A stretch of DNA of 64,000 nt, taken from positions 186,001 to 250,000 of IMG/VR virus record IMGVR_UViG_3300025121_000282. One strand, given 5' to 3'. A program made the translations under genes and the position numbers. This document shows, piece after piece, positions 2,097 to 46,785 of the stretch (position 1 is its first letter; every line of letters begins with the position of its first letter). Under the pieces are notes generated by a model, which worked only from the letters and a program-made list of their open reading frames with translations, did no database searches and was not told the origin of the DNA.

Positions 2097-2150
2097 CTCA
2101 ATCCTCCCGTTGTGTATTCTCTTAGTTATAAGTGTTACAGAAGTATGAGC

Positions 2151-2176
2151 GCAGTAATGGCTGCGGGCGGGGATGA
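2151..2176. repeat. hairpin element copy 1 (GCAGTAATGGCTGCGGGCGGGGATGA)
   Basis: Near-identical to 17638-17667 and 24062-24090. Confidence 0.85.
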
Positions 2177-2318
2177 ACACCCGCTCTCGTGTAAGCGCTC
2201 GTGTGCGTGCGTGTCCGAGTGGGTGTGTTCCAACCTTTACAGACTACATTGACTGACAATTCTGACTATTGAACGGGAGAGTGTGTCCACACTTACCTGA
2301 AAGAGGGGGTATAAGTTT

Positions 2319-2926: not shown

Positions 2927-3409
2927 ATGAAAATGTCTGGTCGTCGCCCCCGAATCGTCGCTTCTTCCCTCGCCCTTCTCGCCCTTCTCGCCCCCGCGAA
3001 CGCTGCCCCTGAGGAGCAGGGGCAGGAGCCGGTCACGGATGGCCTCCCTGGACCCATCGTGACGCCCGAGCCCGAGCCGGTCCTGGAGCCCGTCTCGCCC
3101 CCCACGGCTGCTCTGCAGCAGAAGGCCCCGGCGCCCCTCTGTCTCTGCGGATGCCTCGTGCAGACCTCCTCGGTTCGTCGCCTCTTCCGCCAGGGCCACG
3201 ACGCCCGCCTCGTGGGCTTCGTCGCTCGTGGCAAGCTGGCCGATGGCTCCGAGCCGAGCCCCGAGCAGACCGCAGCGGCGAACCAGATCCGGAGTGCCAA
3301 GGCTTGGACCGCCGCCCGCCGTCTCCCGCCGGTCCTGGAGGCCGCGACCCAGGAGGAAATCTCGGCCACGGAGCAGGCGGGAGAGGCCACTGCTTCCAAC
3401 GTGGGCTGA
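2927..3409 (+). CDS. family A (CLCGC...RQGHDARLVG putative metal-binding protein), copy 1, signal-peptide-like N-terminus
   Basis: Clear paralogy with 18505..18975 and 26000..26506; promoter motif at 2860. Confidence 0.85.
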   Translation: MKMSGRRPRIVASSLALLALLAPANAAPEEQGQEPVTDGLPGPIVTPEPEPVLEPVSPPTAALQQKAPAPLCLCGCLVQTSSVRRLFRQGHDARLVGFVARGKLADGSEPSPEQTAAANQIRSAKAWTAARRLPPVLEAATQEEISATEQAGEATASNVG

Positions 3410-3439: not shown

Positions 3440-3555
3440 GCAAGACCCGGCTGGAAGTCCTAACTGCAGCGGCCCCTCCCTGTTCATCCTCCCTGTTCAC
3501 AGTGAGGCCCAACATGGACCATCCAATGCTTCGGGGATTCTCAGTCGGGTCTTGT
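3440..3555 (+). ncRNA. candidate sRNA with tandem anti-SD-like CCUCCCUGUUCA seeds
   Basis: Between motifs at 3410 and 3566, no ORF; 14-bp closing stem 3440-3453/3542-3555 with two G-U pairs. Confidence 0.65.
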
Positions 3556-3636
3556 TGTATCTGGGTTGACCCGGTTTGTTTCCATGTGAAGAATTATAAG
3601 GAGGAACTATAAAATGGCCCCAGTTCACCCTGCGAT

Positions 3637-5297: not shown

Positions 5298-5385
5298 GCG
5301 AGAGTGGCGAAAAACAGGAAGACGCCCTAGCTTCAGGTGCTAGGGGCTGCAAGGCACTCAGGTTCGAATCCTGACTCTCGTACCA
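5298..5385 (+). tRNA. trnL: tRNA-Leu (CAG)
   Basis: Acceptor GCGAGAG/CTCTCGT+ACCA, anticodon arm CTAGC-TTCAGGT-GCTAG, long variable arm, T arm TCAGG-TTCGAAT-CCTGA; own motif at 5261. Confidence 0.93.
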
Positions 5386-16244: not shown

Positions 16245-16568
16245 ATGAGCAAGCAATTCAGCAGTGGTATGCACGCGTGGTTCAGCTGGAAACAGGCCGA
16301 AGCTGCTGGCGTTCGGACGCTGAAGCGTCCTGATGGGACAACCTACCATCTGACCACAGTGACTGCCGCACTCGAACACGGCTGTGGTTGGGATGACATG
16401 CAATATCTCGGGACCATTGGTGAAGATGACACCGACGTGTGCTCTACCATGTCCTCACGAGAAAACTGCAACCATGTGAAAAACACGACACTTCTCCCGT
16501 TGGATGTGGGTTCCAAAGAGTTCTTTAAACTGGTTCTGGACTGCGAGTCCAACCAGAAAAACAAGTAA
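16245..16568 (+). CDS. family B hypothetical, copy 3
   Basis: Paralogy; motif at 16185. Confidence 0.85.
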   Translation: MSKQFSSGMHAWFSWKQAEAAGVRTLKRPDGTTYHLTTVTAALEHGCGWDDMQYLGTIGEDDTDVCSTMSSRENCNHVKNTTLLPLDVGSKEFFKLVLDCESNQKNK

Positions 16569-16623
16569 CATGACTGACTTGTCTCGGTGTCCACATGGAT
16601 AGTCAACAGAGGTAGTGCAACAG

Positions 16624-16935
16624 ATGGCCGACCTTCGACGTGAATTTACCACTGACCAGTACGAAGCCATGCGCCCAGATTTGGAAGAAGCAAGGGCTGC
16701 AGTTCTGGCTGCGCTTGCCCGACACCATGAACTGGGTCTGACCCAATGGGTCCGTCAAGATGCTGACTCTGTACCTGACCCTGCGGTAAAAGAGGCATTC
16801 AGCCTGTTGAATCAAGCGGCCAGACTCATCGACCGGGCTCAGTTCGAACTAGTGCTGCGCCTCCATACAACCGGAGCCATTGCACCCAAAAATGGCCCGA
16901 CAAGAGAGGCAACAAATGGCAACCATTCCCCGTGA
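16624..16935 (+). CDS. family D helical protein, copy 1
   Basis: Tandem paralog of 16916..17203 (LARHHELG...DPAVKEAF). Confidence 0.8.
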   Translation: MADLRREFTTDQYEAMRPDLEEARAAVLAALARHHELGLTQWVRQDADSVPDPAVKEAFSLLNQAARLIDRAQFELVLRLHTTGAIAPKNGPTREATNGNHSP

Positions 16936-17203
16936 TTTCACCATTGCACAATACGACGCCATGGCCCCCGACTTCGAGGCCGCTCGTGCAGGCGTTCTCG
17001 CCCTATTGGCTCGCCACCATGAACTTGGTCAGAGTCATTGGTTGGGCGGTGATAGTGACTCTGCACCCAACCCCGCGGTCAAAGAAGCATTTGACCTGTT
17101 GCATCAAGCGGTAAGGCTCATGGACCGTGCTCAGCACGAACTGGTCATGCACCTCTGCGCAAACGGGCACATTCCTTTTCAAACCGATCAGAAACCGGAT
17201 TGA
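16916..17203 (+). CDS. family D helical protein, copy 2
   Basis: Tandem paralog; stop inside TTGAC at 17200. Confidence 0.8.
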   Translation: MATIPRDFTIAQYDAMAPDFEAARAGVLALLARHHELGQSHWLGGDSDSAPNPAVKEAFDLLHQAVRLMDRAQHELVMHLCANGHIPFQTDQKPD

Positions 17204-17461
17204 CCGCGGACTGTTTCCGCTCTCTTCAAGGAGCGAGACGACCCAGGATAGTCTTGCATGGGTGACGAAAAACTACCATGCTTAGCTGGAGAAGTAGTGC
17301 ACATCCAGTGAAATGTCGGCACTAGTTGTGGGTTCGGGTGACGCCGATAAGGGGCTGCAGACCCCAAGCGCAAACCCTCCAAATGTGGTATCACTTGGCG
17401 TAAAAAGCCAAGCAATTACGGACAAAGCCACACAAGGCCTGTTGATGGTCCTAGACAGGCT

Positions 17462-17503
17462 ACAGCGCCCTCCCGGCCTCGCAAGTGGTTGAGAGGGCGC
17501 TGT
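17462..17503. terminator. 11-bp hairpin ACAGCGCCCTC/GAGGGCGCTGT, possible terminator
   Basis: Inverted repeat seen directly; weak U-tract. Confidence 0.4.
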
Positions 17504-17616
17504 CGTATTTGAAATCTATGAACAAATAAATTAACCAATCCTTTCGTGGGGTGAAGAACTGTACACAGTGGGCTCGGTGCCACACCCGAACCTTCTTTCC
17601 ACGACTGATGCACCTA

Positions 17617-17667
17617 CCCCCCCCCCCCCCCCCCCCCGCAATAATGGCTGCGGGCGAGGATAGATGT
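17617..17667. repeat. C21 tract plus hairpin element copy 2
   Basis: C21 at 17617-17637, then GCAATAATGGCTGCGGGCGAGGATAGATGT. Confidence 0.85.
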
Positions 17668-18504
17668 ACCCGAATTCGCCCGTTGCGGTCCGCCTGTCAC
17701 CAGTACGTGGCATAGCTGCCCCCTCCCATCTGTACTCCCACGTGAATGCGGCTCGCACTCGCAACCGCCTATCAAACCCACACACCACTCAATTGCGCGC
17801 CCGCATCAAGTACCCACAATTTCGCAAACAGCATACACGAACACGGATGTACACGGAATCGTGTATGCTGTGCTTTCGTGTATGCCAGAACGGATGTACT
17901 GCATCACGCTCTCGCCAACACATGCAAGTGCTCACGTGAACGTACGGGCTGTCACATGTGGGCCCACACACGAGTGTGCTCAGTGTTCAAGAAAATTTGT
18001 CCACAATATCTCGTTCTGATTTCTGAAATTTGTCCGCACTGTTCCCACTCTCCCAAGACAACCACCCCAGCTTTGGAAGCCCCTCAGTTTAGAACTATTC
18101 ACCCCCTGACACCCCTCGAACCAAAGCTATTTACACGTCCACACCTAGAAACTTTCAACTTCTGGTGTGTTTATTTATACCTATGGTTCTAAAAAGCGGT
18201 CTATTATAACAAGGTGTCACCCTTTGGCCAAACCAGAGCCACAGGTTTGGGCCTGCCTTGGGTTTGGGGCTTGGGGGGGGGGAGTTGTTTTTCACCCAGT
18301 AGGGAGTGCTAGATAACCCGTATTTCGGGAGTCTCAAACCGTTGACTACCCATTGACGGAGCCCTGTAGGGGTGAAATAACTCAGAGACGGAGATTTTCT
18401 TTCCCGCCTCGAAGAGACTCCCCCCCCCCGACTAAGGATTGACGAGGCGGGATGGGGAGTGAAGAATCCCAGAGACAATCAACCGACTGAACAGGAGATT
18501 CCCA

Positions 18505-18975
18505 ATGACCACCAAGTCCACCAAGTCCACCACCAAGTCCCCCCGCGCTCCCAAGATCGTCGTCGAGAAGCTGGACGCCCTGGGCTTCCCGATTCCCGCC
18601 GCTGCGCAGGAGCCGGTCATCGTCCCGGTCGAAGAGACCAATCCGGGCGCGACCGGGGTCGCGCCCGTCGTCGTCGTCAAGGCGGTCCGAGTCGTCCCCG
18701 AGGCCCCGCTCTGCCTCTGCGGGTGCCTGACCCAGACCAGCCACCACACCCGGACCTTCCGCCAGGGCCACGACGCCCGGCTGGTGGGGATGTTCCGCAA
18801 GGCGCCCGAGGGCCTCTCGGAGGCGCAGGTCGCGGCGGCCACCCAGATCATCAACCGGAAGCTCCAGAGCGCCGCCGCGAAGCTCCCGGCCGCCTCCAAG
18901 CCCATCCTGGAGGCCGCTCCTGCAGAGCAGAACGAGACCACCAGCGACGAGGCCGCTGCTTCCAACGTGGGCTGA
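18505..18975 (+). CDS. family A (CLCGC...GHDAR) protein, copy 2
   Basis: Paralogy; motif at 18439; AGGAG RBS. Confidence 0.88.
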   Translation: MTTKSTKSTTKSPRAPKIVVEKLDALGFPIPAAAQEPVIVPVEETNPGATGVAPVVVVKAVRVVPEAPLCLCGCLTQTSHHTRTFRQGHDARLVGMFRKAPEGLSEAQVAAATQIINRKLQSAAAKLPAASKPILEAAPAEQNETTSDEAAASNVG

Positions 18976-18982
18976 TCGGCCT

Positions 18983-19007
18983 TTCGCCTCCCGGACGGAG
19001 CGGTCAA
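18983..19007 (-). promoter_or_regulatory. antisense promoter motif TTGAC-N15-GCGAA pointing into 18505..18975
   Basis: Exact motif on the - strand just after the stop codon. Confidence 0.65.
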
Positions 19008-19066
19008 TCTTTGGGTGTCCGAGCCCGGGATTGACCGCCCAAGGACCGAGGTGAATCATCCCGAGA

Positions 19067-19231
19067 TTGGCTGTTCAGAAATCGGTTCGAAACATTGAGG
19101 ATTGGCAACCACCCGGTACGTTCCGGGAAAGGGGTCAATCTTTAGGAGGTGGTTTGTCAGGACCACCAACCCAGCACATAGGCTGACACCTTTTGTGATT
19201 GGGTGCTTCGGACCGGTTTCTGAACAGCCAA
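19067..19231 (+). ncRNA. candidate structured ncRNA 1 (25-bp closing helix, multibranch core)
   Basis: 19067-19091 pairs with 19207-19231, its only non-Watson-Crick pairs being two G-U; own motif at 19031; no ORF. Confidence 0.7.
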
Positions 19232-19269
19232 ATGAGGATTGACCGCTCTGGTCTCCGAGGCGAAGAGTT

Positions 19270-19340
19270 ATGTGGGGGTACCAATCGGCCCTAGAGGCCG
19301 GGGTCCACTGATACGTAATTCAGTATTGGTACCCCCACAT
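19270..19340 (+). ncRNA. candidate ncRNA 2 (three-way junction)
   Basis: Perfect 16-bp stem 19270-19285/19325-19340 enclosing CGGCC/GGCCG and ACTGA/TCAGT hairpins; motif at 19239. Confidence 0.65.
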
Positions 19341-19378
19341 TGTCAATTGACGAGAGTCACCCTCAGGTGAAGTGTCCT

Positions 19379-19553
19379 GGAAGAGAGGACAATCCAAGCC
19401 CCCGAGCCGTGTGGCCCGCCCGACTCCGCGGTAAGGCCTGCCACCCGCTTTGGGACTCAAGGGGCCTCTCTTCCCTTTTCAACTACACCCTCATTGGTCC
19501 TTTTCAAGAGACTGGTGGGGGCGCAGTCGTATTTGGGGTTCGAAAAGGACCAA
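19379..19553 (+). ncRNA. candidate ncRNA 3 (two stem domains)
   Basis: 10-bp stem 19379-19388/19465-19474 and 12-bp stem 19494-19505/19542-19553; motif at 19347. Confidence 0.6.
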
Positions 19554-19609
19554 AACCTGGATTGACCGATTTTGTTTCCATGCGAAGAAAGACAAGGAGG
19601 AACTCAAAA

Positions 19610-19843
19610 ATGTCCAGATTCAAACCCTCGGTTTCGCAGCTGATGGAGGTCCAGCACCGGGTGGACACTCAGAATCCGTCGCAAGTGGCACTCTTCTGCC
19701 GGGTGATTGGTGCCTCGATGCTTGCCAATGCTGCTGCCTCGATTCCCTCCGTCTGGAGAGCGGCTCGGGCCCAGTTGGCCATTGAGGCCGCCACGCTCAA
19801 TGTGGTCTTGGGCATCGACCTCGAAGTGGTTTGGTGCGATTGA
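19610..19843 (+). CDS. hypothetical protein
   Basis: AAGGAGG RBS; stop inside TTGAC at 19840. Confidence 0.8.
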   Translation: MSRFKPSVSQLMEVQHRVDTQNPSQVALFCRVIGASMLANAAASIPSVWRAARAQLAIEAATLNVVLGIDLEVVWCD

Positions 19844-19900
19844 CTGATTTCGTTTCCATGTGAAGAACGACACACAATCGACAGGGAGGGGCTAAAAAAG

Positions 19901-20173
19901 ATGGCACGCTTCTACGTTCAGGCGAGTGAGTACGAGTTGATTGCGTCCCTGGACGTGGTTGTGGCCGACACCTACGAGGCCATCCAACACTTTAACCGGC
20001 ACTTCAAGGGACGGGTTGGCGGGTGGAAAGACGTGAAGAGTTCCACCCACATCGTGATCAACCTTGACAACCCCAAAGAGCACTGGTTGGGAACCGACTC
20101 CTTCAAGCGCATCTGCACCGGGTGGCGCGAAGGTCGAGAATACTGGTCGGGTCCACACTCAATCGAGTATTAA
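19901..20173 (+). CDS. hypothetical protein
   Basis: GGGAGG RBS; stop inside TTAAC at 20170. Confidence 0.8.
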   Translation: MARFYVQASEYELIASLDVVVADTYEAIQHFNRHFKGRVGGWKDVKSSTHIVINLDNPKEHWLGTDSFKRICTGWREGREYWSGPHSIEY

Positions 20174-20236
20174 CCGGTTCCATCTTCAGCTGAAAGAGAC
20201 TACGAGACACCGAACCAACTGAAAGGGGGATTCCAA

Positions 20237-20689
20237 ATGCTCAGCGAAGACCGACTCGAAGTTCTCGACCTCTACGGCTTCGGATGGAATCGCTTCTTTC
20301 AGACGGTCCACGAGCCGGACCCGGAAGTGAAGCGGTCCATGATCGGCGATGTGCTTCTCATGTGGGAGTTCGACAAGACAGGAGCCGAGTACCACTGGTA
20401 CGACCTGTTCACACGCCTCCGCCGAGACGAGCATGCGATCATCCTGGAGCAGCTGTTGGTCTTCATCGACCAGGGGTTCGTCCTCGGACCGTTCGCAGAC
20501 GACACCATCACCATCAACCCGGAAAAGCAGGAAGAACTGATGCTTTTCGTGGGTATGTGGCCGGAGGGTTTCGAGGCACCCGAGGGTGTGGAAGTTCTTC
20601 GCCTGACGGAAGAGGCCAAGGACATTCTCGAAACAGAGGGCGGAGAAGAGTACCTCATCGAGCAGGCGGTCAAAGCACTCAAGGATTGA
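20237..20689 (+). CDS. acidic hypothetical protein
   Basis: Stop inside TTGAC at 20686. Confidence 0.8.
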   Translation: MLSEDRLEVLDLYGFGWNRFFQTVHEPDPEVKRSMIGDVLLMWEFDKTGAEYHWYDLFTRLRRDEHAIILEQLLVFIDQGFVLGPFADDTITINPEKQEELMLFVGMWPEGFEAPEGVEVLRLTEEAKDILETEGGEEYLIEQAVKALKD

Positions 20690-20759
20690 CCGGCCTCTCC
20701 TTCGGGTGAAGGAACTAAGAGAGCACTTTCGCTCTCCTTTTCCAGCCCAGGAGGTCATA

Positions 20760-21065
20760 ATGTCCCGCATCGACGCCGAATTCAAGTCCGTTGTCGCTTT
20801 CGCCAGTTACAAGCTCGACAACGACGACCCCACCTTCACGGGTGCCGATTTGCAAACCCTCAACCGGGTGACGCTGACATCGGTCCCGAACATCAAGCTC
20901 CAATTGCTCGAACTTGGCCTGACCCAGGCCATTCCCGAAAAGGCCTCCGTGGTCCGAGGGTTCACCGCGAACTCGCACGACCGGTGGGCCGGCAACCCCT
21001 GCGCGGGTGGGTCGGGTGGGTCGTCGATCCAGAAGTTCGCAGGGAATGCGGCCGGCTGGAATTGA
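20760..21065 (+). CDS. hypothetical protein
   Basis: AGGAGG RBS; stop inside TTGAC at 21062. Confidence 0.8.
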   Translation: MSRIDAEFKSVVAFASYKLDNDDPTFTGADLQTLNRVTLTSVPNIKLQLLELGLTQAIPEKASVVRGFTANSHDRWAGNPCAGGSGGSSIQKFAGNAAGWN

Positions 21066-21117
21066 CCTGAAGTCCTGTGGGGCGAAAGTCCACACACCAA
21101 ACCAGGGAGTTTTCAGT

Positions 21118-21387
21118 ATGTCGCGAGGCAACTCACAAGTCAATCGAAACTACGAATGCGCCACAAAGATGGCCGAGTGTGCTGATTTCGTGGTTGAGCA
21201 CTTGGGCTCACACGCACACTTTCAGGTGCGATGGGGGCAATTCTGGGCGACGGTCCGCCTCGACAGAAATGGGGATGTCTCGTGCGGGAGTTTCAATCGA
21301 AACTTTTCGCCTTGGGGCTCATCCGCCTCTGTTTTTTCCGAATTGCTGAGACAGTGGAAGTCCGAGGGTGAACCCAAGGCTGATTGA
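21118..21387 (+). CDS. hypothetical protein
   Basis: GGGAG RBS; stop inside TTGAC at 21384. Confidence 0.75.
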   Translation: MSRGNSQVNRNYECATKMAECADFVVEHLGSHAHFQVRWGQFWATVRLDRNGDVSCGSFNRNFSPWGSSASVFSELLRQWKSEGEPKAD

Positions 21388-21447
21388 CCCGTTTCCATTT
21401 CGGACGAAAAGACTACGAGACACCAGCCAACAAAGGAGTAGTTTCCA

Positions 21448-21726
21448 ATGTCCCCACCCTTTCTGATCGATTTTCAGGCCATGCAAGACCACCTGAACTC
21501 AAGGGAGATGGTACTCGCTGCCTGTTCCATCAATCGGGGTCAGCACGCAGGACAGCGGCTACGGCTCGTGGCGCGTTTCCTGGTGGAAGACCCCGGTGAT
21601 AAGGACACGATTTTCTACTATGTCACCCGCACGTTCCAGGGTGATAAGGTGTACGAGGATGGGCCAAGCCCACGTCTGGCTCTCTCGGTGTCGCTGTTCA
21701 ACAGCATCTCCCTGGGCGAAGGTTGA
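21448..21726 (+). CDS. hypothetical protein
   Basis: AAGGAG RBS; stop inside TTGAC at 21723. Confidence 0.8.
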   Translation: MSPPFLIDFQAMQDHLNSREMVLAACSINRGQHAGQRLRLVARFLVEDPGDKDTIFYYVTRTFQGDKVYEDGPSPRLALSVSLFNSISLGEG

Positions 21727-21777
21727 CCCGCCTCGTTTCCATGTGAAGACCAGCACACAATCAAGGAGGAAACAGTA

Positions 21778-22035
21778 ATGACTCTGGCCAACGACCCCCG
21801 CCGGTGGGGCGGGATTTGCAAGTGGGATGGAACTTCGGCTCCCACGGTGACCGTCCAACCCCGGCTCCTGGATCTCCAAGGGTACGACTCGAACGGTCAG
21901 TACTTCGGGCGCGGTCTCCCCCTCTACTGCGTCACAGACGAAGAGGGGGACATGAACTTCTTCGTTCGTGCGGAGGGCATGGACCACGCCCGAGAGTTGG
22001 TTCTGGAGCGGGTTCCCACCTGTCAGTTCGCCTAA
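21778..22035 (+). CDS. hypothetical protein (LDxxGYDxxGxYFGxG)
   Basis: AAGGAGG RBS; motif at 21723. Confidence 0.8.
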   Translation: MTLANDPRRWGGICKWDGTSAPTVTVQPRLLDLQGYDSNGQYFGRGLPLYCVTDEEGDMNFFVRAEGMDHARELVLERVPTCQFA

Positions 22036-22098
22036 GTGGGAATTGACTGAGGTCCGTTTCCACCTGAATTGTGACACACTGAGAAATGGAGACTGAAA

Positions 22099-22323
22099 GT
22101 GGCCAACGTTCCCTACAAGTTTCGTGGTCTTCCCTGCAACATCACGACCGACGACAAGCTCTGGTGCATCGTCGGTCGCTTCGTCAATGAACGGGGTTGC
22201 GGTGGGGGCGCCTTGGAGTGGTGCTACGATGAGCAGGACGCCTCGGCTGTTCTGGCTCAGATGGTTCAGGACAGCCAGTTTCGAAACCTGCAAGCCATCA
22301 CGTATAAGCAGTTCTGCGCTTAA
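22099..22323 (+). CDS. hypothetical protein
   Basis: GGAG RBS; stop inside TTAAC at 22320. Confidence 0.75.
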   Translation: MANVPYKFRGLPCNITTDDKLWCIVGRFVNERGCGGGALEWCYDEQDASAVLAQMVQDSQFRNLQAITYKQFCA

Positions 22324-22373
22324 CCCACGCCGTTTCCATGTGAACAGTCACGCACTGGAAAAGGAGACCGAAA

Positions 22374-22514
22374 ATGGTAAAGAATCTCATCATCGGTCTC
22401 CTGCTCGTTGCCTTCGTGGCACGGGCAAACCCAGAAAAGGTGGCTCATCTGAGCAAGATGGCCACGACTGGAGTCACCTACCTGGAGAAACAGGTCGGGT
22501 TCAAATTCTGGTGA
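22374..22514 (+). CDS. 46-aa membrane-anchored/secreted peptide
   Basis: AAGGAG RBS; MVKNLIIGLLLVAFVARA hydrophobic N-terminus. Confidence 0.65.
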   Translation: MVKNLIIGLLLVAFVARANPEKVAHLSKMATTGVTYLEKQVGFKFW

Positions 22515-22562
22515 ATTGACCGCACCACAATTCGGACGAAGAGTGTTGTAGGAGACACCCCC

Positions 22563-22868
22563 ATGTACAAGAGTTTGGCAGAGTTTCTAGCCTCAACGAA
22601 TTTGCTGGAGAGGTTGACCAACATCGACAGGGCCCTGAATGTAAACGGGGCCCTGTGCAACCACCATGACGGTGTGGTCTTCAAAATCAACTTCGGCCCC
22701 TATACGGCGAGTTGCATGTGGCTGGATACCGTGTCGGACAACACCTGGAATGTCCAACTCTCCTACCTGGATTCAGACCACAAATACCACCCGTTCGGTG
22801 GCAGCGTTTCAACCTCTGAGTTCAAGATCGTAAAGGGTGTAGCCGAGATCTGCGGACTCGGCAATTGA
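22563..22868 (+). CDS. hypothetical protein
   Basis: AGGAG RBS; stop inside TTGAC at 22865. Confidence 0.8.
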   Translation: MYKSLAEFLASTNLLERLTNIDRALNVNGALCNHHDGVVFKINFGPYTASCMWLDTVSDNTWNVQLSYLDSDHKYHPFGGSVSTSEFKIVKGVAEICGLGN

Positions 22869-23245
22869 CGGGGTCTTCTCCGGGTGAAGAGTCCCCGAGG
22901 CGCTTTTGCCTCCCTTGTCCTCTGGGGGTTTTAACCATGCCTTCTTCCGATCTCTCCTTTTCCTTTTCCGGCCGTCCCTACCGCGCCCGCCTTCTCTCCG
23001 AGCCCGGCAAGGGTGACGCGCTGGTCTTCGGTCTCAGCCTCAACCCGAAACTGGACAAGGTCTGGGTTCTGGTGCAACGTGACGGCGCGTGGGTGCGCCC
23101 CACGGGTGAAAAGCCCTCGGCTCTGGGGCGGGCCGCAGTCGCAGCGATCGGTTGATCGGCGTTTCCGATTGACGGGGTCTTCTCCGGGTGAAGAGTCCCC
23201 GAGGCGCTTTTGCCTCCCTTGTCCTCTGGGGGTTTTAACCATGCC
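22864..23245 (+). repeat. 78-bp exact direct repeat (22864-22941, 23168-23245) comprising promoter, leader and ATG
   Basis: Read directly base for base. Confidence 0.95.
22937..23155 (+). CDS. hypothetical protein (MPSSDLSF)
   Basis: ATG inside repeat copy 1. Confidence 0.7.
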   Translation: MPSSDLSFSFSGRPYRARLLSEPGKGDALVFGLSLNPKLDKVWVLVQRDGAWVRPTGEKPSALGRAAVAAIG

Positions 23246-23540
23246 CGCCGCTGCCGCCCTTGCCCTCGACACGTTCCAGGCCAACCACGCGAATGACGAC
23301 CTTTGGGACGTCATGACGTTTGCTGATATGGTGGAAAACTGGCACCTTTCGACCCCCGAAGAAGAGTGCTTCAAAGCGGCTCTGGAGTTGGAGGGGCTCG
23401 GCCTCCTCACCGTCAGTACCGGATTTCTGTGCTACTCGGTCGAACTGACGGGCCTTGGGCGAGAGGCCTCCCAGATCTTCCACCAGCGGTTTTTGGACCG
23501 CGTGAAGGCCCAGAACCCGGACTTCGATGGCGTATGGTAA
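23241..23540 (+). CDS. hypothetical protein (MPAAAALA)
   Basis: ATG inside repeat copy 2. Confidence 0.75.
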   Translation: MPAAAALALDTFQANHANDDLWDVMTFADMVENWHLSTPEEECFKAALELEGLGLLTVSTGFLCYSVELTGLGREASQIFHQRFLDRVKAQNPDFDGVW

Positions 23541-23592
23541 GGGATTGACTGAAATCTGTTTCCATGTGAATTGTGACAAGGAGGAACTCAAA

Positions 23593-23820
23593 ATGGAAAC
23601 AGAAATCCTGACCCAGTGGTTCAACGAGGAAAGCGGCAATCACTGGATCGTGGTGGAAGACGCCATTGGGAAGTTTCTTCACAAGGGAAAACGGGTGGCA
23701 CTGCTGGCGGTCAGCGGTGATGTGGACAACACCTTCGTACTGAAGTGGGTTGTCGACCCCTGCTGGACGACGGAAGAGGAAGAATCGGCACTGTCAGTGC
23801 TTGGAGTTGCAGCCCGCTGA
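23593..23820 (+). CDS. hypothetical protein
   Basis: GAGGA RBS; motif at 23545. Confidence 0.75.
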   Translation: METEILTQWFNEESGNHWIVVEDAIGKFLHKGKRVALLAVSGDVDNTFVLKWVVDPCWTTEEEESALSVLGVAAR

Positions 23821-23865
23821 ATCGATTCAGCGGGATTGACCGCAGTTTTTTCGTGTGAATTACAA

Positions 23866-24050
23866 TGTACCGGGGCGACCTCCGAAGGGCCACTTAGCTC
23901 TTAAACATGTGCCTACGCCCCAAAGTGCTATGCGGTAGGGTGCATGCAATAGTCGTCAATGGTGTCTGGCGTAAGTGTGCTGCGGGGTCGGGTCAATGTT
24001 CGACCGTAAGACCGTCTGAAGCACACAGACACCGTTCCTTTTAAAGCTGG
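23866..24050 (+). ncRNA. candidate structured ncRNA 4
   Basis: Motif at 23836 followed by no ORF; nested stems 23961-67/24027-33, 23975-81/24020-26, 23986-90/24001-05 and 23906-16/23935-46. Confidence 0.55.
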
Positions 24051-24051
24051 A

Positions 24052-24090
24052 CCCCCCCCCTGCAATAATGGCTGCGGGCGGGGATAGATG
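24052..24090. repeat. C9 tract plus hairpin element copy 3
   Basis: GCAATAATGGCTGCGGGCGGGATAGATGT at 24062-24090. Confidence 0.85.
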
Positions 24091-24318
24091 TGTCAAACGT
24101 GTGGACACCTGCTACGCCTGTCAACGCGTCCACGCTGCATCCGCACAACCCACTCAGACGTACCCCCACGGGAGACATTCGAGCCGCACAATCCATTGTA
24201 ACCCGTTTCCACATAATAGTAAGTTGTGGTGGGTGGCAGGTTGTCCGAGGCATTTGAAAACTCACTGTTGAATCTTCCACCTGAGATTGACCCGTTTCCA
24301 TCTCGGGTGAAAAACAAC

Positions 24319-24714
24319 ATGGAAACAACATGGACCAATGAAGACGCAGCCGAAGCAGGACGAGCCTACCAAGGAGCCAACGACCCGGATTGGCAGGCAC
24401 CTGACCTGGACTGGCGGTACGAACCTGCTTTTCCAGTTGAAAAACTCATCCCGCTGATGCCGAGTGGGTTCAACGGCTGGAATTCGTGGCTGCTGGACGA
24501 GCGGCAGTGGGACGAGTCTGGAGGTACCAGTCGATGGGGCGACGAATTCACCGAGTGGTGGAAGCAACAGTCCGAGGATGAGCCCGTGGTCCTCGTGGAA
24601 TCGCACGATGGGTCCAAAATCCTTGGGATCTGGGATGGGTGGCCCCGGTCTGCGGTTTCCATCACCTCAAGGTTGCCGACCCTACCTGCCTTTGTGGGTC
24701 GGGCCAGACAATGA
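24319..24714 (+). CDS. possible degenerate ParB/Srx-like domain protein; probably leaderless
   Basis: EPVVLVE...IWDGWPR resembles the ParB DGxHR motif with H replaced by P; ATG 8 nt after GTGAA. Confidence 0.6.
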   Translation: METTWTNEDAAEAGRAYQGANDPDWQAPDLDWRYEPAFPVEKLIPLMPSGFNGWNSWLLDERQWDESGGTSRWGDEFTEWWKQQSEDEPVVLVESHDGSKILGIWDGWPRSAVSITSRLPTLPAFVGRARQ

Positions 24715-24806
24715 TTCAGCCATAACTCCCTGGTGACAAGTTGCAATTGACCGAACTTTCGTTCAGGCGAAAGTTCTGGAGAGACAACCAACCACGAAGA
24801 TTCCAA

Positions 24807-25025
24807 ATGACCCTCCCCATCACGATTTTCGTTGTCACGACCGCCTCGTCCATTGACGAAAACACACCGAACCCGAAGGTGATGGTGGGACACCTCTCCG
24901 AAGGCGAAATCTGGAACCAGTTCACCGAGCTCCTGGGTGGGTCTGACTGCGAACTCATCCAGGAGAGCGAAACCCGCTGGACCGGCGTCGTGGGAGACCG
25001 GACGGTCTTCGCCTTCCACGCCTGA
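24807..25025 (+). CDS. hypothetical protein
   Basis: Motif at 24747. Confidence 0.7.
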   Translation: MTLPITIFVVTTASSIDENTPNPKVMVGHLSEGEIWNQFTELLGGSDCELIQESETRWTGVVGDRTVFAFHA

Positions 25026-25085
25026 ACGATTGACGGGCTTTGTTTCTGTCTGACGAACACCACACCAACAAGGGAGACTTCGAAA

Positions 25086-25304
25086 ATGACTCGCGAAACC
25101 GTCACCAAGTGCATTGCCTTCATTTACATCTGCCTTTGCACCATTGGCCTCGGCGCCATGGCGGGCCTGCAGGAGCGGCAGTTCAGCGGGGCATGGTGGG
25201 TGCTCAGTCTCCTGATGGCCGCGGTCGTGGCGGTCATGGGCCTCATGGCCACCGTCTGCGAGCGCAAGCACCTGGGTTGGCGAATCTGGGTCGAAGAGTG
25301 CTGA
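25086..25304 (+). CDS. two-TM membrane protein
   Basis: GGGAG RBS; two hydrophobic segments. Confidence 0.75.
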   Translation: MTRETVTKCIAFIYICLCTIGLGAMAGLQERQFSGAWWVLSLLMAAVVAVMGLMATVCERKHLGWRIWVEEC

Positions 25305-25364
25305 TTGACGGAGCCTCCTGAGGGGCGAAGAGTCCCAGACCAACAACCAAGAGGAGACCGCACG

Positions 25365-25709
25365 ATGCCATTCCCCACCCCCCAGATCGAAGCTGCCACT
25401 CCCACCCCCTGCTCCGCCTTTCGGGCGTGGGCTGTCTACGCCGACTTCGACGGCAATGCGCCTGACACCAAGGACCTCGTCCTTTGCGCCTCCGAACCGC
25501 TGGCGCAAGCGGCGGCAGAGTTCCTCGCGTGGGCTGCCGACGAGCAGCAGGCGAACTGTTACAATGGCGCTGACTGCGACCCTGATGCCGATGGTGTTGC
25601 CGTCCCATCGGTCGACGAAGCGAATCGCGCGAGGAATTTCGTGGTCCGCGAGACCGTGGCCTCTCGGGTCTGCACGACCTGGGACGAGGTGTTGGCCGAC
25701 CTTCGCTAA
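25365..25709 (+). CDS. hypothetical protein
   Basis: GAGGAG RBS; motif at 25305. Confidence 0.75.
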   Translation: MPFPTPQIEAATPTPCSAFRAWAVYADFDGNAPDTKDLVLCASEPLAQAAAEFLAWAADEQQANCYNGADCDPDADGVAVPSVDEANRARNFVVRETVASRVCTTWDEVLADLR

Positions 25710-25999: not shown

Positions 26000-26506
26000 A
26001 TGGCCACCAAGTCCACCAAGAGCACCACCAAGTCCCCCCGCGCCACCCGCAAGCAGGCCGAGGTCCTCGACGCCCTCGGTTTCCCGGTCCCCGCCATCAT
26101 GGAGGCCGCTCCCGAGCCCGTCGTGGCGCCCGAGCCCGAAATCCCGGTGGTCGTGGCCGTCAAGGCCGAAAAGGCGGTCCGAGTCGTCCCCGAGGCCCCG
26201 CTCTGCCTCTGCGGCTGCCTCGTGCAGACGAGCAGCCACCTGCGGACCTTCCGCCAGGGCCATGACGCCCGGCTGGTGGGCTTCCTGGCCGCCAACGAGC
26301 GGGCGGTCGCGAAGCAGAAGGAGGCCCCTCACAACCTCTCGGAGGCGCAGATCACCGCCGCCTGCCAGATCCGGAACCGCAAGGCGGAGGCCGCCGCCGC
26401 GAAGCTCCCTTCGACCTCGTCGAAGCCCGTGCTGGAGGCCGCTCCTGCGGAGCAGAACGAAGCCGAGCAGAGCACGGACGAGCAGGACGCCGCGAACGCC
26501 GGCTGA
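26000..26506 (+). CDS. family A (CLCGC...GHDAR) protein, copy 3
   Basis: Paralogy; motif at 25929; AAGGAG RBS. Confidence 0.88.
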   Translation: MATKSTKSTTKSPRATRKQAEVLDALGFPVPAIMEAAPEPVVAPEPEIPVVVAVKAEKAVRVVPEAPLCLCGCLVQTSSHLRTFRQGHDARLVGFLAANERAVAKQKEAPHNLSEAQITAACQIRNRKAEAAAAKLPSTSSKPVLEAAPAEQNEAEQSTDEQDAANAG

Positions 26507-43167: not shown

Positions 43168-44436
43168 ATGATTGATAGATACTCTTATCCAGAAATGGTT
43201 AAGGTGTGGTCGGATGAGCATAAATACGACCTATGGTTTCAACTAGAAACTAAGGTATGCAGGGCCATGGAAAAGCTAGGAACTGTTCCACCTGGAACTG
43301 CGTCTGCCATAGAGAGTAACACTAAAATAAATATAAAAAGAATTTTAGAACTAGAGTCTATAGTGAGGCACGACGTCATAGCATTTTTAAGCCACATAGA
43401 AGAACAAAACGCAGACCATTCCCGTTGGTTGCATTTAGGGCTTACGAGTTCAGACATTACTGACACAACATTCTCAATTTTATTGGACGAGGCACTGTCT
43501 TTAATTGAAGGTCAGGTGTGTGAGCTATTGGACGTAATCAGGGAATTGGCTTATAAGCATAAATTTACTATGGTTATTGGACGAAGCCACGGGATGCACG
43601 CAGAACCAACAACATTCGGACTTATAATGGCTTCTTTTTATTCTGAATTTAAAAGAAATCAGGCAAGACTAAATCAGGCAAAAGAGGGTATAAACGTATG
43701 TAAGTTCAGTGGCCCTGTTGGCAACTTTTCCAGTATAGACCCGCTAGTAGAAGTTGAAATAAGTCTCAGGTCTGGAATGAGCCCAGAGCCGGCTGCATCC
43801 CAGATTATAAATAGAGATAGACACGCTTATTATTTTAGTGTACTTGCTTTAGTTGGTACAAGCATTGAGAGACTCGCTTTACAAATAAGACATTGGCAGA
43901 GAAGTGAAGTAGGGGAGGTAGAGGAACCTTTTTCGCCTCGTCAAAAGGGTTCCTCGGCAATGCCACACAAACACAACCCTATTATTTCTGAGAACCTGAC
44001 TGGACTAGCTAGAATGCTCAGAGGGTATGCCCAATCGGCCATGGAAAATGTAGCCCTGTGGCACGAAAGAGACATCAGTCACTCTAGTGTAGAAAGATTT
44101 ATTGGGCCAGACTCAACGTCTATTTTGTATTATATGCTGAAAAAGACTGTGTTTTTATTAAAAAATATGAGAGTAAACTCTGCCAAAATGGCGGAGAATT
44201 TGAATAAGTCTATGGACTACATCCACAGCCAAAAGTTGTTACTCGCACTTACAACAGGTGGAACACCAAGACAAGAGGCGTACACCCACATACAAAACGC
44301 CCTGAAGTCTGGGGAGAGCCTGGAAGAATGGTCTAAACGACAAATTGCAACCAGTGTGTTGGTTGATAAAGTATTCAATGGGCACCAAGACTACACCAAG
44401 CACGTGGACTACATCTTTGAACGTACATTTGTGTAA
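43168..44436 (+). CDS. purB: adenylosuccinate lyase
   Basis: MIDRY...W, HDVIAF, GLTSSD, GRSHGMHAEPTTFG, signature GSSAMPHKHNP, LWHERDISHSSVER. Confidence 0.97.
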   Translation: MIDRYSYPEMVKVWSDEHKYDLWFQLETKVCRAMEKLGTVPPGTASAIESNTKINIKRILELESIVRHDVIAFLSHIEEQNADHSRWLHLGLTSSDITDTTFSILLDEALSLIEGQVCELLDVIRELAYKHKFTMVIGRSHGMHAEPTTFGLIMASFYSEFKRNQARLNQAKEGINVCKFSGPVGNFSSIDPLVEVEISLRSGMSPEPAASQIINRDRHAYYFSVLALVGTSIERLALQIRHWQRSEVGEVEEPFSPRQKGSSAMPHKHNPIISENLTGLARMLRGYAQSAMENVALWHERDISHSSVERFIGPDSTSILYYMLKKTVFLLKNMRVNSAKMAENLNKSMDYIHSQKLLLALTTGGTPRQEAYTHIQNALKSGESLEEWSKRQIATSVLVDKVFNGHQDYTKHVDYIFERTFV

Positions 44437-45159: not shown

Positions 45160-46785
45160 ATGGACCAAACTAAAACCATAACCCACGGCACCATTGTTCG
45201 CAAGAAAATGGTACGAGGGGCTCAGATCTTAGCCAGAACTGTGGGAGTCACACTTGGCCCCAAGGGTAGAAATGTCATGATTGACCGGGCCATGCTCGGT
45301 CCTGTAATAACCAAGGATGGTGTCACAGTAGCGAAAGAGGTGATGCTCTCTGACCCGTTAGAGGACATGGGTGCCACTATCGTGCGTCAGGCGTCGGAAA
45401 AGACCTCCGACGACGCAGGAGACGGCACGACGACGGCTACTGTAATAGCGGGCAGGCTGATTACTGAGGCAAACAAACTGGTAGAGAGCGGGATGTCGCC
45501 TATAAACTTGCACAAAGGCATGCTTATAGCACAAAGATACATAACTGACCAGATTGGCCAAACTGCCACAAAAATATCCTCTGTTGAAGAAATAAAGGCA
45601 GTTGCTACACTGTCAGCCAATGGCGACACTACTATAGGTGACACAGTTTCTGAAGCCATGGACGCCGTTGGTAAAGACGGTGTCATAATGGTCGAAGAGT
45701 CCAACACCGTAAAAGATGTGCTTGAACTTATTGAGGGAGCCCGGTACGAAAAAGGCTGGAAGGACCAAGCCTTTGGCGGTATTTCGGGCACAGCAACACT
45801 GGAAAATCCGTATGTCTTAATTATAGGCGAAAGAGTAGAAGCAATCAATGCTTTTGTAGACACTATTCATTTTATTTTGGAGTCTGGCAGGCCCTTGTTG
45901 TTCATTGCAAATGATATAGCGTTGGACGCCTTGTCCACGTTTATCCTTAACCACAAAAAAGAACAACTCATTTGTTGTTGTGTTCCTGGTCCCTCATTTG
46001 GTCAGAAAATGAGGGATATGATGGAGGACTTGGCTATTTTTACTGGTGCAACGCTTATTGCAACAAATAAGGGCATCAAACCGTCCGACATCAAACCGGA
46101 ACACCTAGGAACATGCGACAAAGCCGTAATAAATAAAACTCACACTACTATATTTGGTGGTAAGGGTTCGAATGAGAACATTACGGCCAGAATCACATCG
46201 CTGCGCTCTCAAAGGGACAGTGCACTATCTCTTTTTGACAAAGACAGGTATCAAGAGAGAATCGGTATGCTGTCTGGCGGTATTGGTGTGATAAAGATAG
46301 GGGAAATGACAGAAGCAGCCCTGAGAGAGCGGAAGGCCCGTGTAGAGGACGCAATTGGGGCCACAAGGTCTGCCATAAAGCATGGCGTAGTAGCTGGTGG
46401 TGGCTCAATTTTGGCTAAAATCTCCGCAAGCATGGGTGACTTGGATGACTATGGGGAACATGACGTAGAAGAGTGTGCCGGGTGGAATGCTGTAAGAACA
46501 GCAATACAAGAACCTATACGACTCATCGCTAAAAATTGCGGAGTAAATGCAGATACTGTTTATAGGGTAGTGTCTAGCTCTGTAGACCCCAAATTTGGTT
46601 GGAACGCATCAACAGAGGAATACGGGGACTTGTTTATCGACGGGGTTATTGACCCATCAGCTGTAACTCAAAATGTTGTGGTTAATGCCATTTCTGCTGT
46701 CCATGGGATTTTGACATCTGAATGCGCTATTGTGTACACCCAGTATGTTAAAGATCAGGACTTGTCCGGAGGGCTCCATGTCTGA
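45160..46785 (+). CDS. groEL: phage chaperonin GroEL
   Basis: TLGPKGRNV, TKDGVTVAKE, AGDGTTTATV, LSGGIGVIKIG, RVEDAIGATR..GVVAGGG; no GGM tail. Confidence 0.97.
   Translation: MDQTKTITHGTIVRKKMVRGAQILARTVGVTLGPKGRNVMIDRAMLGPVITKDGVTVAKEVMLSDPLEDMGATIVRQASEKTSDDAGDGTTTATVIAGRLITEANKLVESGMSPINLHKGMLIAQRYITDQIGQTATKISSVEEIKAVATLSANGDTTIGDTVSEAMDAVGKDGVIMVEESNTVKDVLELIEGARYEKGWKDQAFGGISGTATLENPYVLIIGERVEAINAFVDTIHFILESGRPLLFIANDIALDALSTFILNHKKEQLICCCVPGPSFGQKMRDMMEDLAIFTGATLIATNKGIKPSDIKPEHLGTCDKAVINKTHTTIFGGKGSNENITARITSLRSQRDSALSLFDKDRYQERIGMLSGGIGVIKIGEMTEAALRERKARVEDAIGATRSAIKHGVVAGGGSILAKISASMGDLDDYGEHDVEECAGWNAVRTAIQEPIRLIAKNCGVNADTVYRVVSSSVDPKFGWNASTEEYGDLFIDGVIDPSAVTQNVVVNAISAVHGILTSECAIVYTQYVKDQDLSGGLHV

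What the first reader, a model, noticed from the sequence alone, without database searches (positions are those of the whole stretch)
23836..24050. About 185-nt structured RNA cassette leading into hairpin element 3
The promoter motif at 23836 is followed by no RBS or ORF. A long nested arm forms at 23961-24033, an 11-bp arm at 23906-23946 has an alternative pairing GGGGCG/CGCCCC (23872-77/23916-21) that suggests a pseudoknot or switch, and AGCT(C)TTAAA/TTTAAAGCT could close the fold. It ends at the C9 tract. It could be an independent ncRNA or a primer/activator RNA for the adjacent element.
Basis: partly seen in the sequence, partly recalled or inferred. Interest (0 to 1): 0.6.

Follow-up and report, generated by a model that had tools for sequence, protein, structure and literature searches.

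The report
Untranslated promoter leader, only weakly structured
A strong copy of a giant groundwater phage's early-promoter motif is followed by about 450 gene-free bases. The flagged first 185 fold no better than shuffled sequence apart from one ordinary long hairpin, so this is most likely an untranslated leader or terminator stretch running into a three-copy conserved element.

Summary
The window lies in a 314,886-bp virus record from groundwater metagenomes. Window 1-28000 is a dense array of small + strand genes, each behind a promoter-like motif (ATTGAC, 13-16 nt, GTGAA).

Confirmed:
- The motif at 23835-23859 is a top-ranked copy (6th of 49).
- 23821-24318 has no codon periodicity and no ribosome-binding site.
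- The 23958-24036 hairpin and the C9 tract (24052-24060) are present.

Not confirmed:
- The 225-nt cassette folds like its shuffles (z -0.9), and so does the 420-nt spacer (z -0.1).
- The long hairpin ranks only 119th of 2991 local windows.
- The 11-bp arm has 6% probability and the proposed closing helix about 0.3%.
- There is no Rfam match, no second copy and no relative, so covariation could not be tested. No RNA runs exist.

What is conserved is the downstream element. A 40-nt core is 95% identical between two copies, and 24 nt of it recur in a third. A further ~135 nt of homology to one copy follows, in a C-rich, G-poor tail.

Best reading: an untranslated leader with a leaky terminator or processing hairpin, feeding a conserved cis element and a Rho-prone tail at the boundary between two gene arrays. 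The function is inferred, not shown. Interest is low to moderate. Neighbouring gene-free cassettes with fold z scores of -5 to -10 deserve more attention.

The parts
23593..23820 (+). Last gene (75 aa) of the upstream early-gene array. It sits behind promoter motif 23544 and a Shine-Dalgarno sequence.
   Evidence: no Pfam or PHROG match
23813..23834 (+). Perfect 9-bp palindromic hairpin that contains the stop codon (23818-23820) and abuts the next promoter motif. Together they form a terminator-like stem-loop plus promoter composite.
   Evidence: dG -15.7 kcal/mol, z -3.0, 1 of 200 shuffles as good
23835..23866 (+). Promoter-like motif: ATTGAC, 14 nt, GTGAA, then TACAAT. The transcription start is inferred near 23864-23868.
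   Evidence: 30.9 bits, rank 6 of 49. The same spacing occurs at 22864, 23168 and 18352.
23865..23897 (+). 10-codon ORF whose ATG lies where the transcript is predicted to start, so it could be leaderless. It overlaps the 5' arm of the GGGGCG/CGCCCC helix. Speculative.
   Evidence: Read. In some searches the ATG lies 4-7 nt after the GTGAA block at 24319, 27000 and 24882, and 5 nt here.
23872..23921 (+). GGGGCG/CGCCCC helix (23872-77 with 23916-21) enclosing a small hairpin. It is the dominant fold of the 5' half but no better than shuffles.
   Evidence: probability 0.93; z -0.21 for 23866-23950
23896..23907 (+). boxA-like 12-mer. By my reading it matches 10 of 12 positions of both the E. coli rrn boxA and the lambda nutR boxA. 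It is the only GCTCTT[TA]A word in the 64-kb window.
   Evidence: Window-wide, matches of this quality occur at chance frequency (6 found, 5.9 expected).
23906..23946 (+). Low predicted occupancy.
   Evidence: z -0.85; probability 0.06
23958..24036 (+). Long imperfect hairpin (10 bp, a 7-nt bulge, 7 bp, then a distal stem) followed by CC and four U (24039-24042). Candidate leaky terminator or processing site.
   Evidence: dG -34.1 kcal/mol; z -2.6; rank 119 of 2991
24052..24091 (+). Conserved core of 'hairpin element 3': the C9 tract, a small hairpin with loop AUAAUGGC, and a G-rich 3' flank. It is 95% identical to window 17628-17667, and 24 nt of it are shared with 2151-2174.
   Evidence: The fold itself is not significant.
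24092..24239 (+). Tail homologous to copy 2 (17668-17797). It is C-rich and G-poor (33% C, 21% G over 24090-24230) and looks like a Rho-loading (rut) site.
24286..24318 (+). Next promoter-like motif, at the head of the downstream array. The gene 24319-24714 (131 aa) starts 7 nt after the GTGAA block with no Shine-Dalgarno sequence.

Best explanation
The flagged stretch is the promoter-proximal, untranslated part of a 0.5-kb non-coding spacer (23821-24318) between two early-gene arrays of a 315-kb groundwater phage. Host-type RNA polymerase starts at a strong copy of the phage's early-promoter motif, near 23866. The first ~90 nt have no special structure. The 79-nt hairpin (23958-24036) with its short U run then acts as a leaky terminator or processing site. 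Read-through transcripts carry the three-copy conserved core and a C-rich, G-poor, untranslated tail, on which Rho would be expected to stop transcription before the next array. On this reading the 185 nt are a leader or spacer serving a boundary and regulatory zone, not a self-standing folded RNA. SHOWN: the motif, the lack of coding signal, the hairpin, the conservation of the core, and the base composition. INFERRED: that the motif is a promoter, where transcription starts, and every termination step.
For: The promoter motif is top-ranked and strand-specific. Other copies sit 22-50 nt before a Shine-Dalgarno sequence and ATG, and one directly before tRNA-Leu. No sigma factor or RNA polymerase family was found in the phage genome, so host polymerase is assumed. 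There is no coding signal in 23821-24318. Only the hairpin exceeds its shuffles, and it is followed by CCUUUU. The core is 95% identical between copies 2 and 3, while the nearby paralogous genes are 70% identical, which points to constraint or gene conversion on the core. All three copies are on the transcribed strand, collinear with one paralogue each. Copy 2 also has a promoter motif reading into it. The tails downstream of copies 2 and 3 are among the most C-over-G-biased 100-nt windows of the first 30 kb. The region is otherwise so compact that stop codons lie inside the next promoter motif, so 0.5 kb of spacer is unlikely to be idle.
Against: There is no transcript evidence of any kind: all 13 runs listed for this DNA are DNA runs. 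The U run is only four long, and the hairpin is ordinary for this region. The scan for simple terminators found none in 23000-25000. The core does not fold better than its shuffles, and its three copies fold differently. There is no sequence variation across samples and no relatives, so selection on the 185 nt cannot be shown. They could be inert spacer.
Confidence: 0.4

Rival explanations
1. Inert remnant: an 'empty' promoter cassette left by gene loss or segmental duplication in a region that shuffles at its repeated promoters. The 185 nt have no function.
For: The body is unique, is not conserved next to copies 1 and 2 of the element, and folds like shuffled sequence. The region does rearrange at promoter repeats: a 304-bp tandem duplication flanked by 78-nt identical repeats is missing in another sample.
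Against: Gene packing elsewhere is extreme. The promoter copy is one of the best. The adjoining core is under constraint or conversion. The sequence is identical in samples from several studies, though this is weak evidence because the whole region is nearly invariant.
Confidence: 0.22
2. Processive antitermination leader, like nut or put. The boxA-like word with its adjacent hairpin, and/or the conserved core, modify RNA polymerase that started at 23835 so that it reads through the C-rich terminator zone and the downstream array.
For: The 12-mer at 23896-23907 matches 10 of 12 positions of both the rrn and lambda nutR boxA and is the only GCTCTT[TA]A word in the window. A hairpin follows it at once. 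The sequence-related cores lie about 50 nt (copy 2) and about 185 nt (copy 3) downstream of promoter motifs. This resembles putL and putR of HK022, which are about 70 nt long, related in sequence, and placed just after PL and about 270 nt after PR (PMC9378689). A rut-like tail follows, as at lambda nutR-tR1 (textbook knowledge).
Against: boxA-quality matches occur at chance frequency in the window. Neither other copy has such a word. There is no boxB-type small hairpin. No N- or Q-like protein was recognised. The two-hairpin fold of the core is neither significant nor consistent between copies. The arrays have few terminators that would need overriding.
Confidence: 0.13
3. Independent trans-acting small RNA of about 175 nt that ends at the 23958-24036 hairpin.
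For: There is a strong promoter, a terminal hairpin and a U run. The same region holds gene-free promoter cassettes that clearly are structured RNAs, with z scores of -5 to -10.
Against: Unlike those cassettes it has no closing stem and no excess stability. No complementarity of 13 nt or more to any other part of the genome was found beyond the promoter motif and one direct-orientation 13-mer. No Rfam match.
Confidence: 0.12
4. Leader-peptide switch. A leaderless 10-codon ORF (23865-23897) is translated, the ribosome opens the GGGGCG/CGCCCC helix, and the 11-bp arm forms instead, changing the fate of the transcript.
For: The ATG sits at the position used by three apparently leaderless genes. 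The two helices are mutually exclusive.
Against: An ATG at such a position has roughly a 6% chance expectation (my estimate). No terminator or ribosome-binding site is controlled by either helix. Neither helix beats its shuffles.
Confidence: 0.04
5. Primer or activator RNA of a transcription-dependent replication origin formed by element 3.
For: A promoter reads into a homopolymer tract and a conserved non-coding element. Copy 2 is followed by two direct repeats with a DnaA-box-like core and by an AT-rich stretch.
Against: The RNA would be C-rich over a G-rich template, the unfavourable polarity for stable R-loops (textbook knowledge: ColE1 RNA II, mitochondrial CSB II). DnaA-box-like words do not cluster at the elements. 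Three origins within 22 kb is unlikely. GC skew shows no switch here. The replication genes lie in the first ~52 kb of the record, about 135-185 kb away.
Confidence: 0.04

Closest known systems
PeSL (promoter-early stem-loop) cassettes of T4-type phages (PMC2839356, PMC4122927)
   Same: There are many near-identical early-promoter copies, some fused to a preceding stem-loop (23813-23834 plus 23835-23866). They flank small genes of unknown function in a variable region. Recombination between copies creates insertions and deletions, such as the 304-bp duplication polymorphism.
   Different: The sequence is unrelated, the phage lineage is different and most copies lack a stem-loop. Here the cassette carries no gene.
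Lambda PR'-tR' unit (6S RNA) and other promoter-proximal terminated leaders
   Same: A strong promoter is followed by about 180-190 nt of untranslated RNA ending at a hairpin. The RNA itself has no known function, and the site serves regulation of read-through (textbook knowledge).
   Different: No Q-binding element, no late operon downstream, and a weak U run. Termination was not tested.
Lambda nut sites / rrn boxA (PMC3177189)
   Same: A boxA-like 12-mer (10 of 12 positions) lies about 30 nt after the inferred start. A hairpin follows, and a C-rich tract lies downstream.
   Different: The match is at chance level window-wide. There is no boxB-like 15-nt hairpin and no recognisable N protein. 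The host is unknown.
HK022 putL/putR RNA (PMC9378689)
   Same: Sequence-related copies of a ~70-nt element lie at variable distance downstream of early promoters on the transcribed strand.
   Different: No sequence similarity, no supported two-stem fold, and three copies rather than two. Action on polymerase is untested.
Transcription-primed origins (ColE1 RNA II; T4 ori(uvsY)/ori(34))
   Same: A promoter is directed into a non-coding element.
   Different: The purine/pyrimidine polarity is wrong for a stable hybrid, no unwinding element adjoins copy 3, and there is no origin evidence.

Membership tests
Any Rfam 15 family (riboswitch, leader, sRNA, tRNA-like and others) | Covariance-model score at the family's gathering threshold | tested here: not met
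   no match in the whole window at gathering thresholds; in 16500-25500 the only hit at E up to 5 is an irrelevant miRNA at 18363-18432.
Structured non-coding RNA (generic) | A fold more stable than composition-matched shuffles | tested here: not met
   z -0.89 for the 225 nt, z -0.21 for the 5' half and z -0.14 for the 420 nt. Only the hairpin reaches z -2.6, and it ranks 119 of 2991 locally.
Structured non-coding RNA (generic) | Compensatory base changes in homologues | not testable with these tools
   No homologue of 23866-24050 was found in the genome, phage records, IMG/VR or JGI metagenomes. Other samples carry the identical sequence.
Independent small RNA gene | A discrete transcript with defined 5' and 3' ends | not testable with these tools
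   no RNA run holds this DNA. Contigs cannot show transcript ends.
Intrinsic (Rho-independent) terminator | A GC-rich stem directly followed by a U run | tested here: inconclusive
   The basal stem is 10 bp and is followed by CC and four U. The hairpin is far longer than a usual terminator and was not called by the simple scan.
Lambda-type nut site | A boxA word (GCUCUU(U)A...) | tested here: inconclusive
   10 of 12 positions match at 23896-23907 by my reading, but the window holds 6 such matches against 5.9 expected.
Lambda-type nut site | A boxB hairpin (5-bp stem with a purine-rich pentaloop) a few nt after boxA, and a cognate N protein | tested here: not met
   What follows is a 41-nt imperfect hairpin with 6% probability. 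The six neighbouring proteins scanned gave no informative Pfam or PHROG family.
HK022 put RNA | About 70 nt folding into two stem-loops, with related copies downstream of early promoters | tested here: inconclusive
   The position and copy pattern fit. The alignment fold proposes two stems, but each copy folds differently and none beats its shuffles.
PeSL-like promoter/stem-loop shuffling cassette | A repeated early promoter fused to a stem-loop, at gene boundaries in a variable region, with indels at the repeats | tested here: met
   Searches show the composite at 23813-23866. One search shows a 304-bp indel between 78-nt promoter repeats. This is an analogy of mechanism. Homology to T4 PeSLs was not tested.
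Transcription-primed replication origin | G-rich RNA over a C-rich template, an adjacent unwinding element, and initiator boxes | tested here: not met
   The transcript would be C-rich. There is no cluster of DnaA-box-like words and no skew switch.

The most novel reading that the evidence does not exclude
The 23835 transcription unit and the three-copy core belong to an RNA-based early-gene control layer of a singleton 315-kb groundwater phage. On this reading, promoter-driven non-coding cassettes mark the heads and tails of gene arrays. The conserved core would be a new cis-acting RNA signal that reprogrammes host polymerase or loads Rho, comparable to put or nut but unrelated in sequence. 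The hyper-stable neighbouring cassettes would be companion RNAs, for example processing sites or decoys.
Probability: 0.15. Interest if true: 0.65.

Novelty: new member of a known kind. Interest (0 to 1): 0.3.

Why it matters
On its own the flagged stretch matters little. It is a gene-free leader behind a repeated early promoter, a layout long known from lambda, T4 and T7.

Its value is as a pointer. It shows that this uncultured giant phage interrupts an extremely compact early region with about six gene-free islands. One short sequence in three of those islands is kept far better than the neighbouring genes. Other islands encode RNAs of exceptional predicted stability.

If the conserved core proves to be a transcription signal, it would be an example of RNA- or DNA-encoded control of host polymerase in a huge phage that has no recognisable sigma factor or polymerase of its own.

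Tried and rejected
Tried, with no useful result:
- Rfam at gathering and permissive thresholds gave nothing relevant.
- No relatives were found. I searched phage records by DNA. I searched IMG/VR with two flanking proteins, a 1234-aa structural protein and three DNA patterns. The single pattern hit was a chance match in an unrelated AT-rich contig.
- The JGI metagenome scan returned only identical copies of the same phage.
- The core pattern gave two hits in 185,579 prokaryote genomes, about the number I would expect by chance and with unrelated flanks.
- Contigs from four other samples show no differences in 23590-24276. They break at the 40-nt repeat, as expected for 31-mer assemblies.
- A tblastn search with the 43168-44436 protein, run to guess the host, found only PurB-like enzymes in many unrelated phages.

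Rejected ideas:
- A protein-coding reading of the 45-aa ORF, of the 67-aa ORF that starts inside the core (24068-24271), and of - strand ORFs. There is no periodicity, no ribosome-binding site, and the copy 2 / copy 3 differences are block-wise, not codon-wise.
- A DnaA-box cluster or origin.
- A sigma-70-type promoter inside the core (TTTAAA, 18 nt, AATAAT). Copy 2 has only C residues where the -35 would be.
- A phage-encoded sigma factor or RNA polymerase as reader of the motif. Absence of Pfam hits does not exclude a very divergent enzyme.

Tools not used or limited:
- The costly protein search was not run. Distant protein homologues would not give alignable leaders.
- No alternative genetic code was used.

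Full report
CONTEXT

The window is positions 186001-250000 of a 314,886-bp IMG/VR virus record judged complete. The same DNA occurs in groundwater and soil metagenome runs from five studies, all of them DNA runs.

Window 1-28000 has 52-58% GC, against 42-47% in the rest. It is packed with small + strand genes. Nearly every gene is preceded by a promoter-like motif: ATTGAC, 13-16 nt, GTGAA, usually continuing GAA.

A weight matrix built from 49 copies finds 63 sites of at least 15 bits on the + strand of genome 150-216 kb and 2 on the - strand. About 27 of the 37 copies in window 1-29500 are followed within 22-50 nt by a Shine-Dalgarno sequence and a start codon. One copy directly precedes tRNA-Leu.

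Many genes end with the TGA or TAA that lies inside the next motif's TTGAC or TTAAC, so there is no intergenic space at all. No sigma factor or RNA polymerase family was detected in the phage. I therefore take the motif to be an early promoter for host polymerase. That is an inference.

THE OBSERVATION

The motif at 23835-23859 is real and strong: 30.9 bits, rank 6 of 49. It abuts a perfect 9-bp palindromic hairpin (23813-23834, z -3.0) that contains the stop codon of the upstream 75-aa gene.

From 23821 to 24318 the three-frame GC periodicity seen in the flanking genes disappears. The only ORF in the cassette (23907-24044, 45 aa) has no ribosome-binding site. Six-frame comparison with the whole genome finds nothing except the shared element. 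So 'no RBS or ORF' is confirmed.

The long arm exists: 23958-24036, dG -34.1 kcal/mol, pair probability about 1. The C9 tract is at 24052-24060.

IS IT MORE THAN CHANCE?

Mostly not.
- The 225-nt cassette has z -0.89, and 37 of 200 shuffles fold as well.
- The 5' half has z -0.21.
- The whole 420-nt spacer has z -0.14.
- The hairpin alone has z -2.6 at hand-picked ends. In an unbiased scan of 2991 windows over 30 kb it ranks 119th.
- The 11-bp arm and the GGGGCG/CGCCCC helix share bases, so they are alternatives and not a pseudoknot. The model gives 0.93 to the latter and 0.06 to the former. The proposed closing helix gets about 0.003.

A useful calibration comes from other gene-free promoter cassettes in the same region, which are exceptionally stable.
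- 19060-19237: dG -95.5 kcal/mol, z -9.8.
- 19268-19345: z -5.3.
- 3440-3562: z -6.2.

Each of these is closed by a 15-25-bp stem. The phage therefore does contain strongly folding, promoter-flanked, gene-free cassettes, and the flagged cassette is not one of them.

WHAT THE CASSETTE LEADS INTO

'Hairpin element 3' is one of exactly three + strand copies of a conserved core, at window 2151-2174, 17628-17667 and 24052-24091.

Copies 2 and 3 are 95% identical over 40 nt (a C21 or C9 tract plus the core). They remain alignable for about 135 nt more, with shared blocks separated by fully diverged blocks.

All three copies are collinear with one member each of a paralogous ~160-aa gene family (2927-3409, 18505-18975, 26000-26506; PHROG families of unknown function). 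The copies of that gene next to elements 2 and 3 are only 70% identical. The core is thus kept much better than the duplicated genes around it, which suggests constraint or gene conversion.

Its small hairpin (loop AUAAUGGC) is present in all copies. Neither it nor a proposed second stem is thermodynamically notable, and the three copies fold differently. Recognition is therefore more likely to be of sequence than of shape.

The tails after copies 2 and 3 are among the most C-rich, G-poor stretches of the 30 kb.

Copy 2 has a promoter motif about 50 nt upstream. Copy 1 has at most a weak one, which I read by eye. Neither is preceded by anything resembling the 185 nt.

So a promoter reading into the element recurs in at least two of the three copies, but the flagged cassette body is a unique spacer.

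MECHANISM

My best reading, with confidence about 0.4, has four steps.
1. Host polymerase starts near 23866.
2. The untranslated RNA meets the long hairpin followed by CCUUUU, which would stop or pause a fraction of polymerases.
3. The remaining polymerases transcribe the core and the C-rich tail.
4. An untranslated, C-rich, G-poor RNA is the classical Rho substrate (textbook knowledge), so the unit would end before the next array, which starts at promoter motif 24286.

The zone would then act as a boundary or regulator between arrays. All termination steps are inferred.

RIVALS

- Inert remnant. The region shuffles at its promoter repeats: a 304-bp tandem duplication at 22864-23471 is collapsed in another sample.
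- nut/put-like antitermination leader. The 12-mer at 23896-23907 matches 10 of 12 positions of the rrn and lambda boxA and is the only such word in the window. However, matches of that quality occur at chance frequency. The layout of the cores recalls putL and putR.
- A ~175-nt trans-acting RNA.
- A leaderless 10-codon leader peptide at 23865-23897.
Its strand polarity is wrong for a stable R-loop. DnaA-box-like words do not cluster here. The replication genes (NAD ligase, RecD2-like helicase, DnaB, PolA) lie in genome 1-52 kb.

COMPARATIVE AND EXPRESSION EVIDENCE

None is obtainable here.
- No similar DNA exists in 50,697 phage records.
- IMG/VR holds no relative by three proteins or three DNA patterns.
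- The metagenome scan returned only the identical phage.
- The two hits of the core in prokaryote genomes look like chance matches.
- Contigs from other samples are letter-identical over 23590-24276 and break at the 40-nt repeat.
- No RNA run holds the sequence.

VERDICT

The sequence features are largely as described. The interpretation as a distinct structured RNA with a switch or pseudoknot is not supported. The stretch is best filed as an untranslated promoter-proximal leader with an ordinary hairpin, a new member of a known kind.

The conserved three-copy core and the hyper-stable neighbouring cassettes are the more promising objects.

Noticed in passing
window 19060-19237: A gene-free cassette between promoter motifs 19030 and 19238. 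It folds into a four-way junction closed by a ~25-bp stem, with dG -95.5 kcal/mol against -54 for shuffles (z -9.8). No Rfam match.
   Followed up: partly
window 19268-19345 and 3440-3562: Two more promoter-driven gene-free cassettes with long perfect closing stems. The first has a 16-bp stem and a three-way junction (z -5.3). The second has a 15-bp stem (z -6.2). Together with 19060-19237 they look like a class of 'closed' RNAs placed just after paralogues of one gene family.
   Followed up: partly
window 2151-2174, 17628-17667, 24052-24091: A three-copy conserved core, all on the + strand. Copies 2 and 3 are 95% identical over 40 nt while the neighbouring paralogous genes are 70% identical. 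Copies 2 and 3 are preceded by C21 and C9 tracts and followed by C-rich tails.
   Followed up: partly
window 1-29500, + strand (genome 150-216 kb): A promoter-like motif family (ATTGAC, 13-16 nt, GTGAA) with 63 sites on the + strand and 2 on the - strand. The stop codons of many genes lie inside the next motif's TTGAC or TTAAC, so genes and promoters overlap with zero spacing. The downstream block does not look like a standard -10 element.
   Followed up: partly
window 22864-23471: A 304-bp tandem duplication bounded by 78-nt identical repeats (promoter plus 5' leader). One groundwater sample carries the single-copy form (joint 22863 to 23168).
   Followed up: partly
window 24319, 27000, 24882: Genes whose ATG lies only 4-7 nt after the GTGAA block, with no Shine-Dalgarno sequence. 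They are probably leaderless mRNAs, which may be a clue to the host.
   Followed up: no
window 17183-18431: A 1.25-kb gene-free island. It contains a ~290-nt RNA-like unit with a strong terminal hairpin (17462-17505), element copy 2, the most C-biased stretch of the region, two direct repeats AAATTTGTCC(A/G)CA (17993-18005 and 18027-18039), an AT-rich stretch, and a 13-bp inverted repeat (G10AGT at 18273-18285, ACTC10 at 18417-18429) that brackets promoter motif 18352.
   Followed up: partly
window 17495-17511 and 19519-19535: A shared 17-nt tail motif, GGGCGC(T/A)GTCGTATTTG, at the 3' ends of two different gene-free cassettes. It may be a common terminator or processing signal.
   Followed up: no
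window 2927-3409, 18505-18975, 26000-26506: Three paralogues of a ~160-aa protein with a CLCGC...FRQGHDARLVG motif. They match PHROG families 5395, 5390 and 5539 of unknown function and have no Pfam or PDB match. Each lies downstream of one copy of the element.
   Followed up: partly
window 5298-5385: tRNA-Leu(CAG) was called by ARAGORN directly behind a promoter motif, but it did not reach Rfam's tRNA gathering score.
   Followed up: no
genome 2966-6454, 24993-28199, 45540-48407 (L009, L010, L012): Replication-module proteins are interrupted by intein/LAGLIDADG domains: a RecD2-like helicase, an unidentified 1068-aa protein, and a DnaB-like helicase. A LAGLIDADG-methylase fusion lies at genome 37310-40189.
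   Followed up: no
window 43168-44436 and 45160-46785: The phage carries an adenylosuccinate lyase (PurB-like, ~43% identity to copies in diverse phages) and a GroEL-type chaperonin.
   Followed up: no
window 1440-2180 (- strand): A low-GC gene on the opposite strand, directly beside element copy 1, with only weak matches (PlyG cell-wall-binding domain, E 0.003). It looks foreign to the surrounding high-GC array.
   Followed up: no
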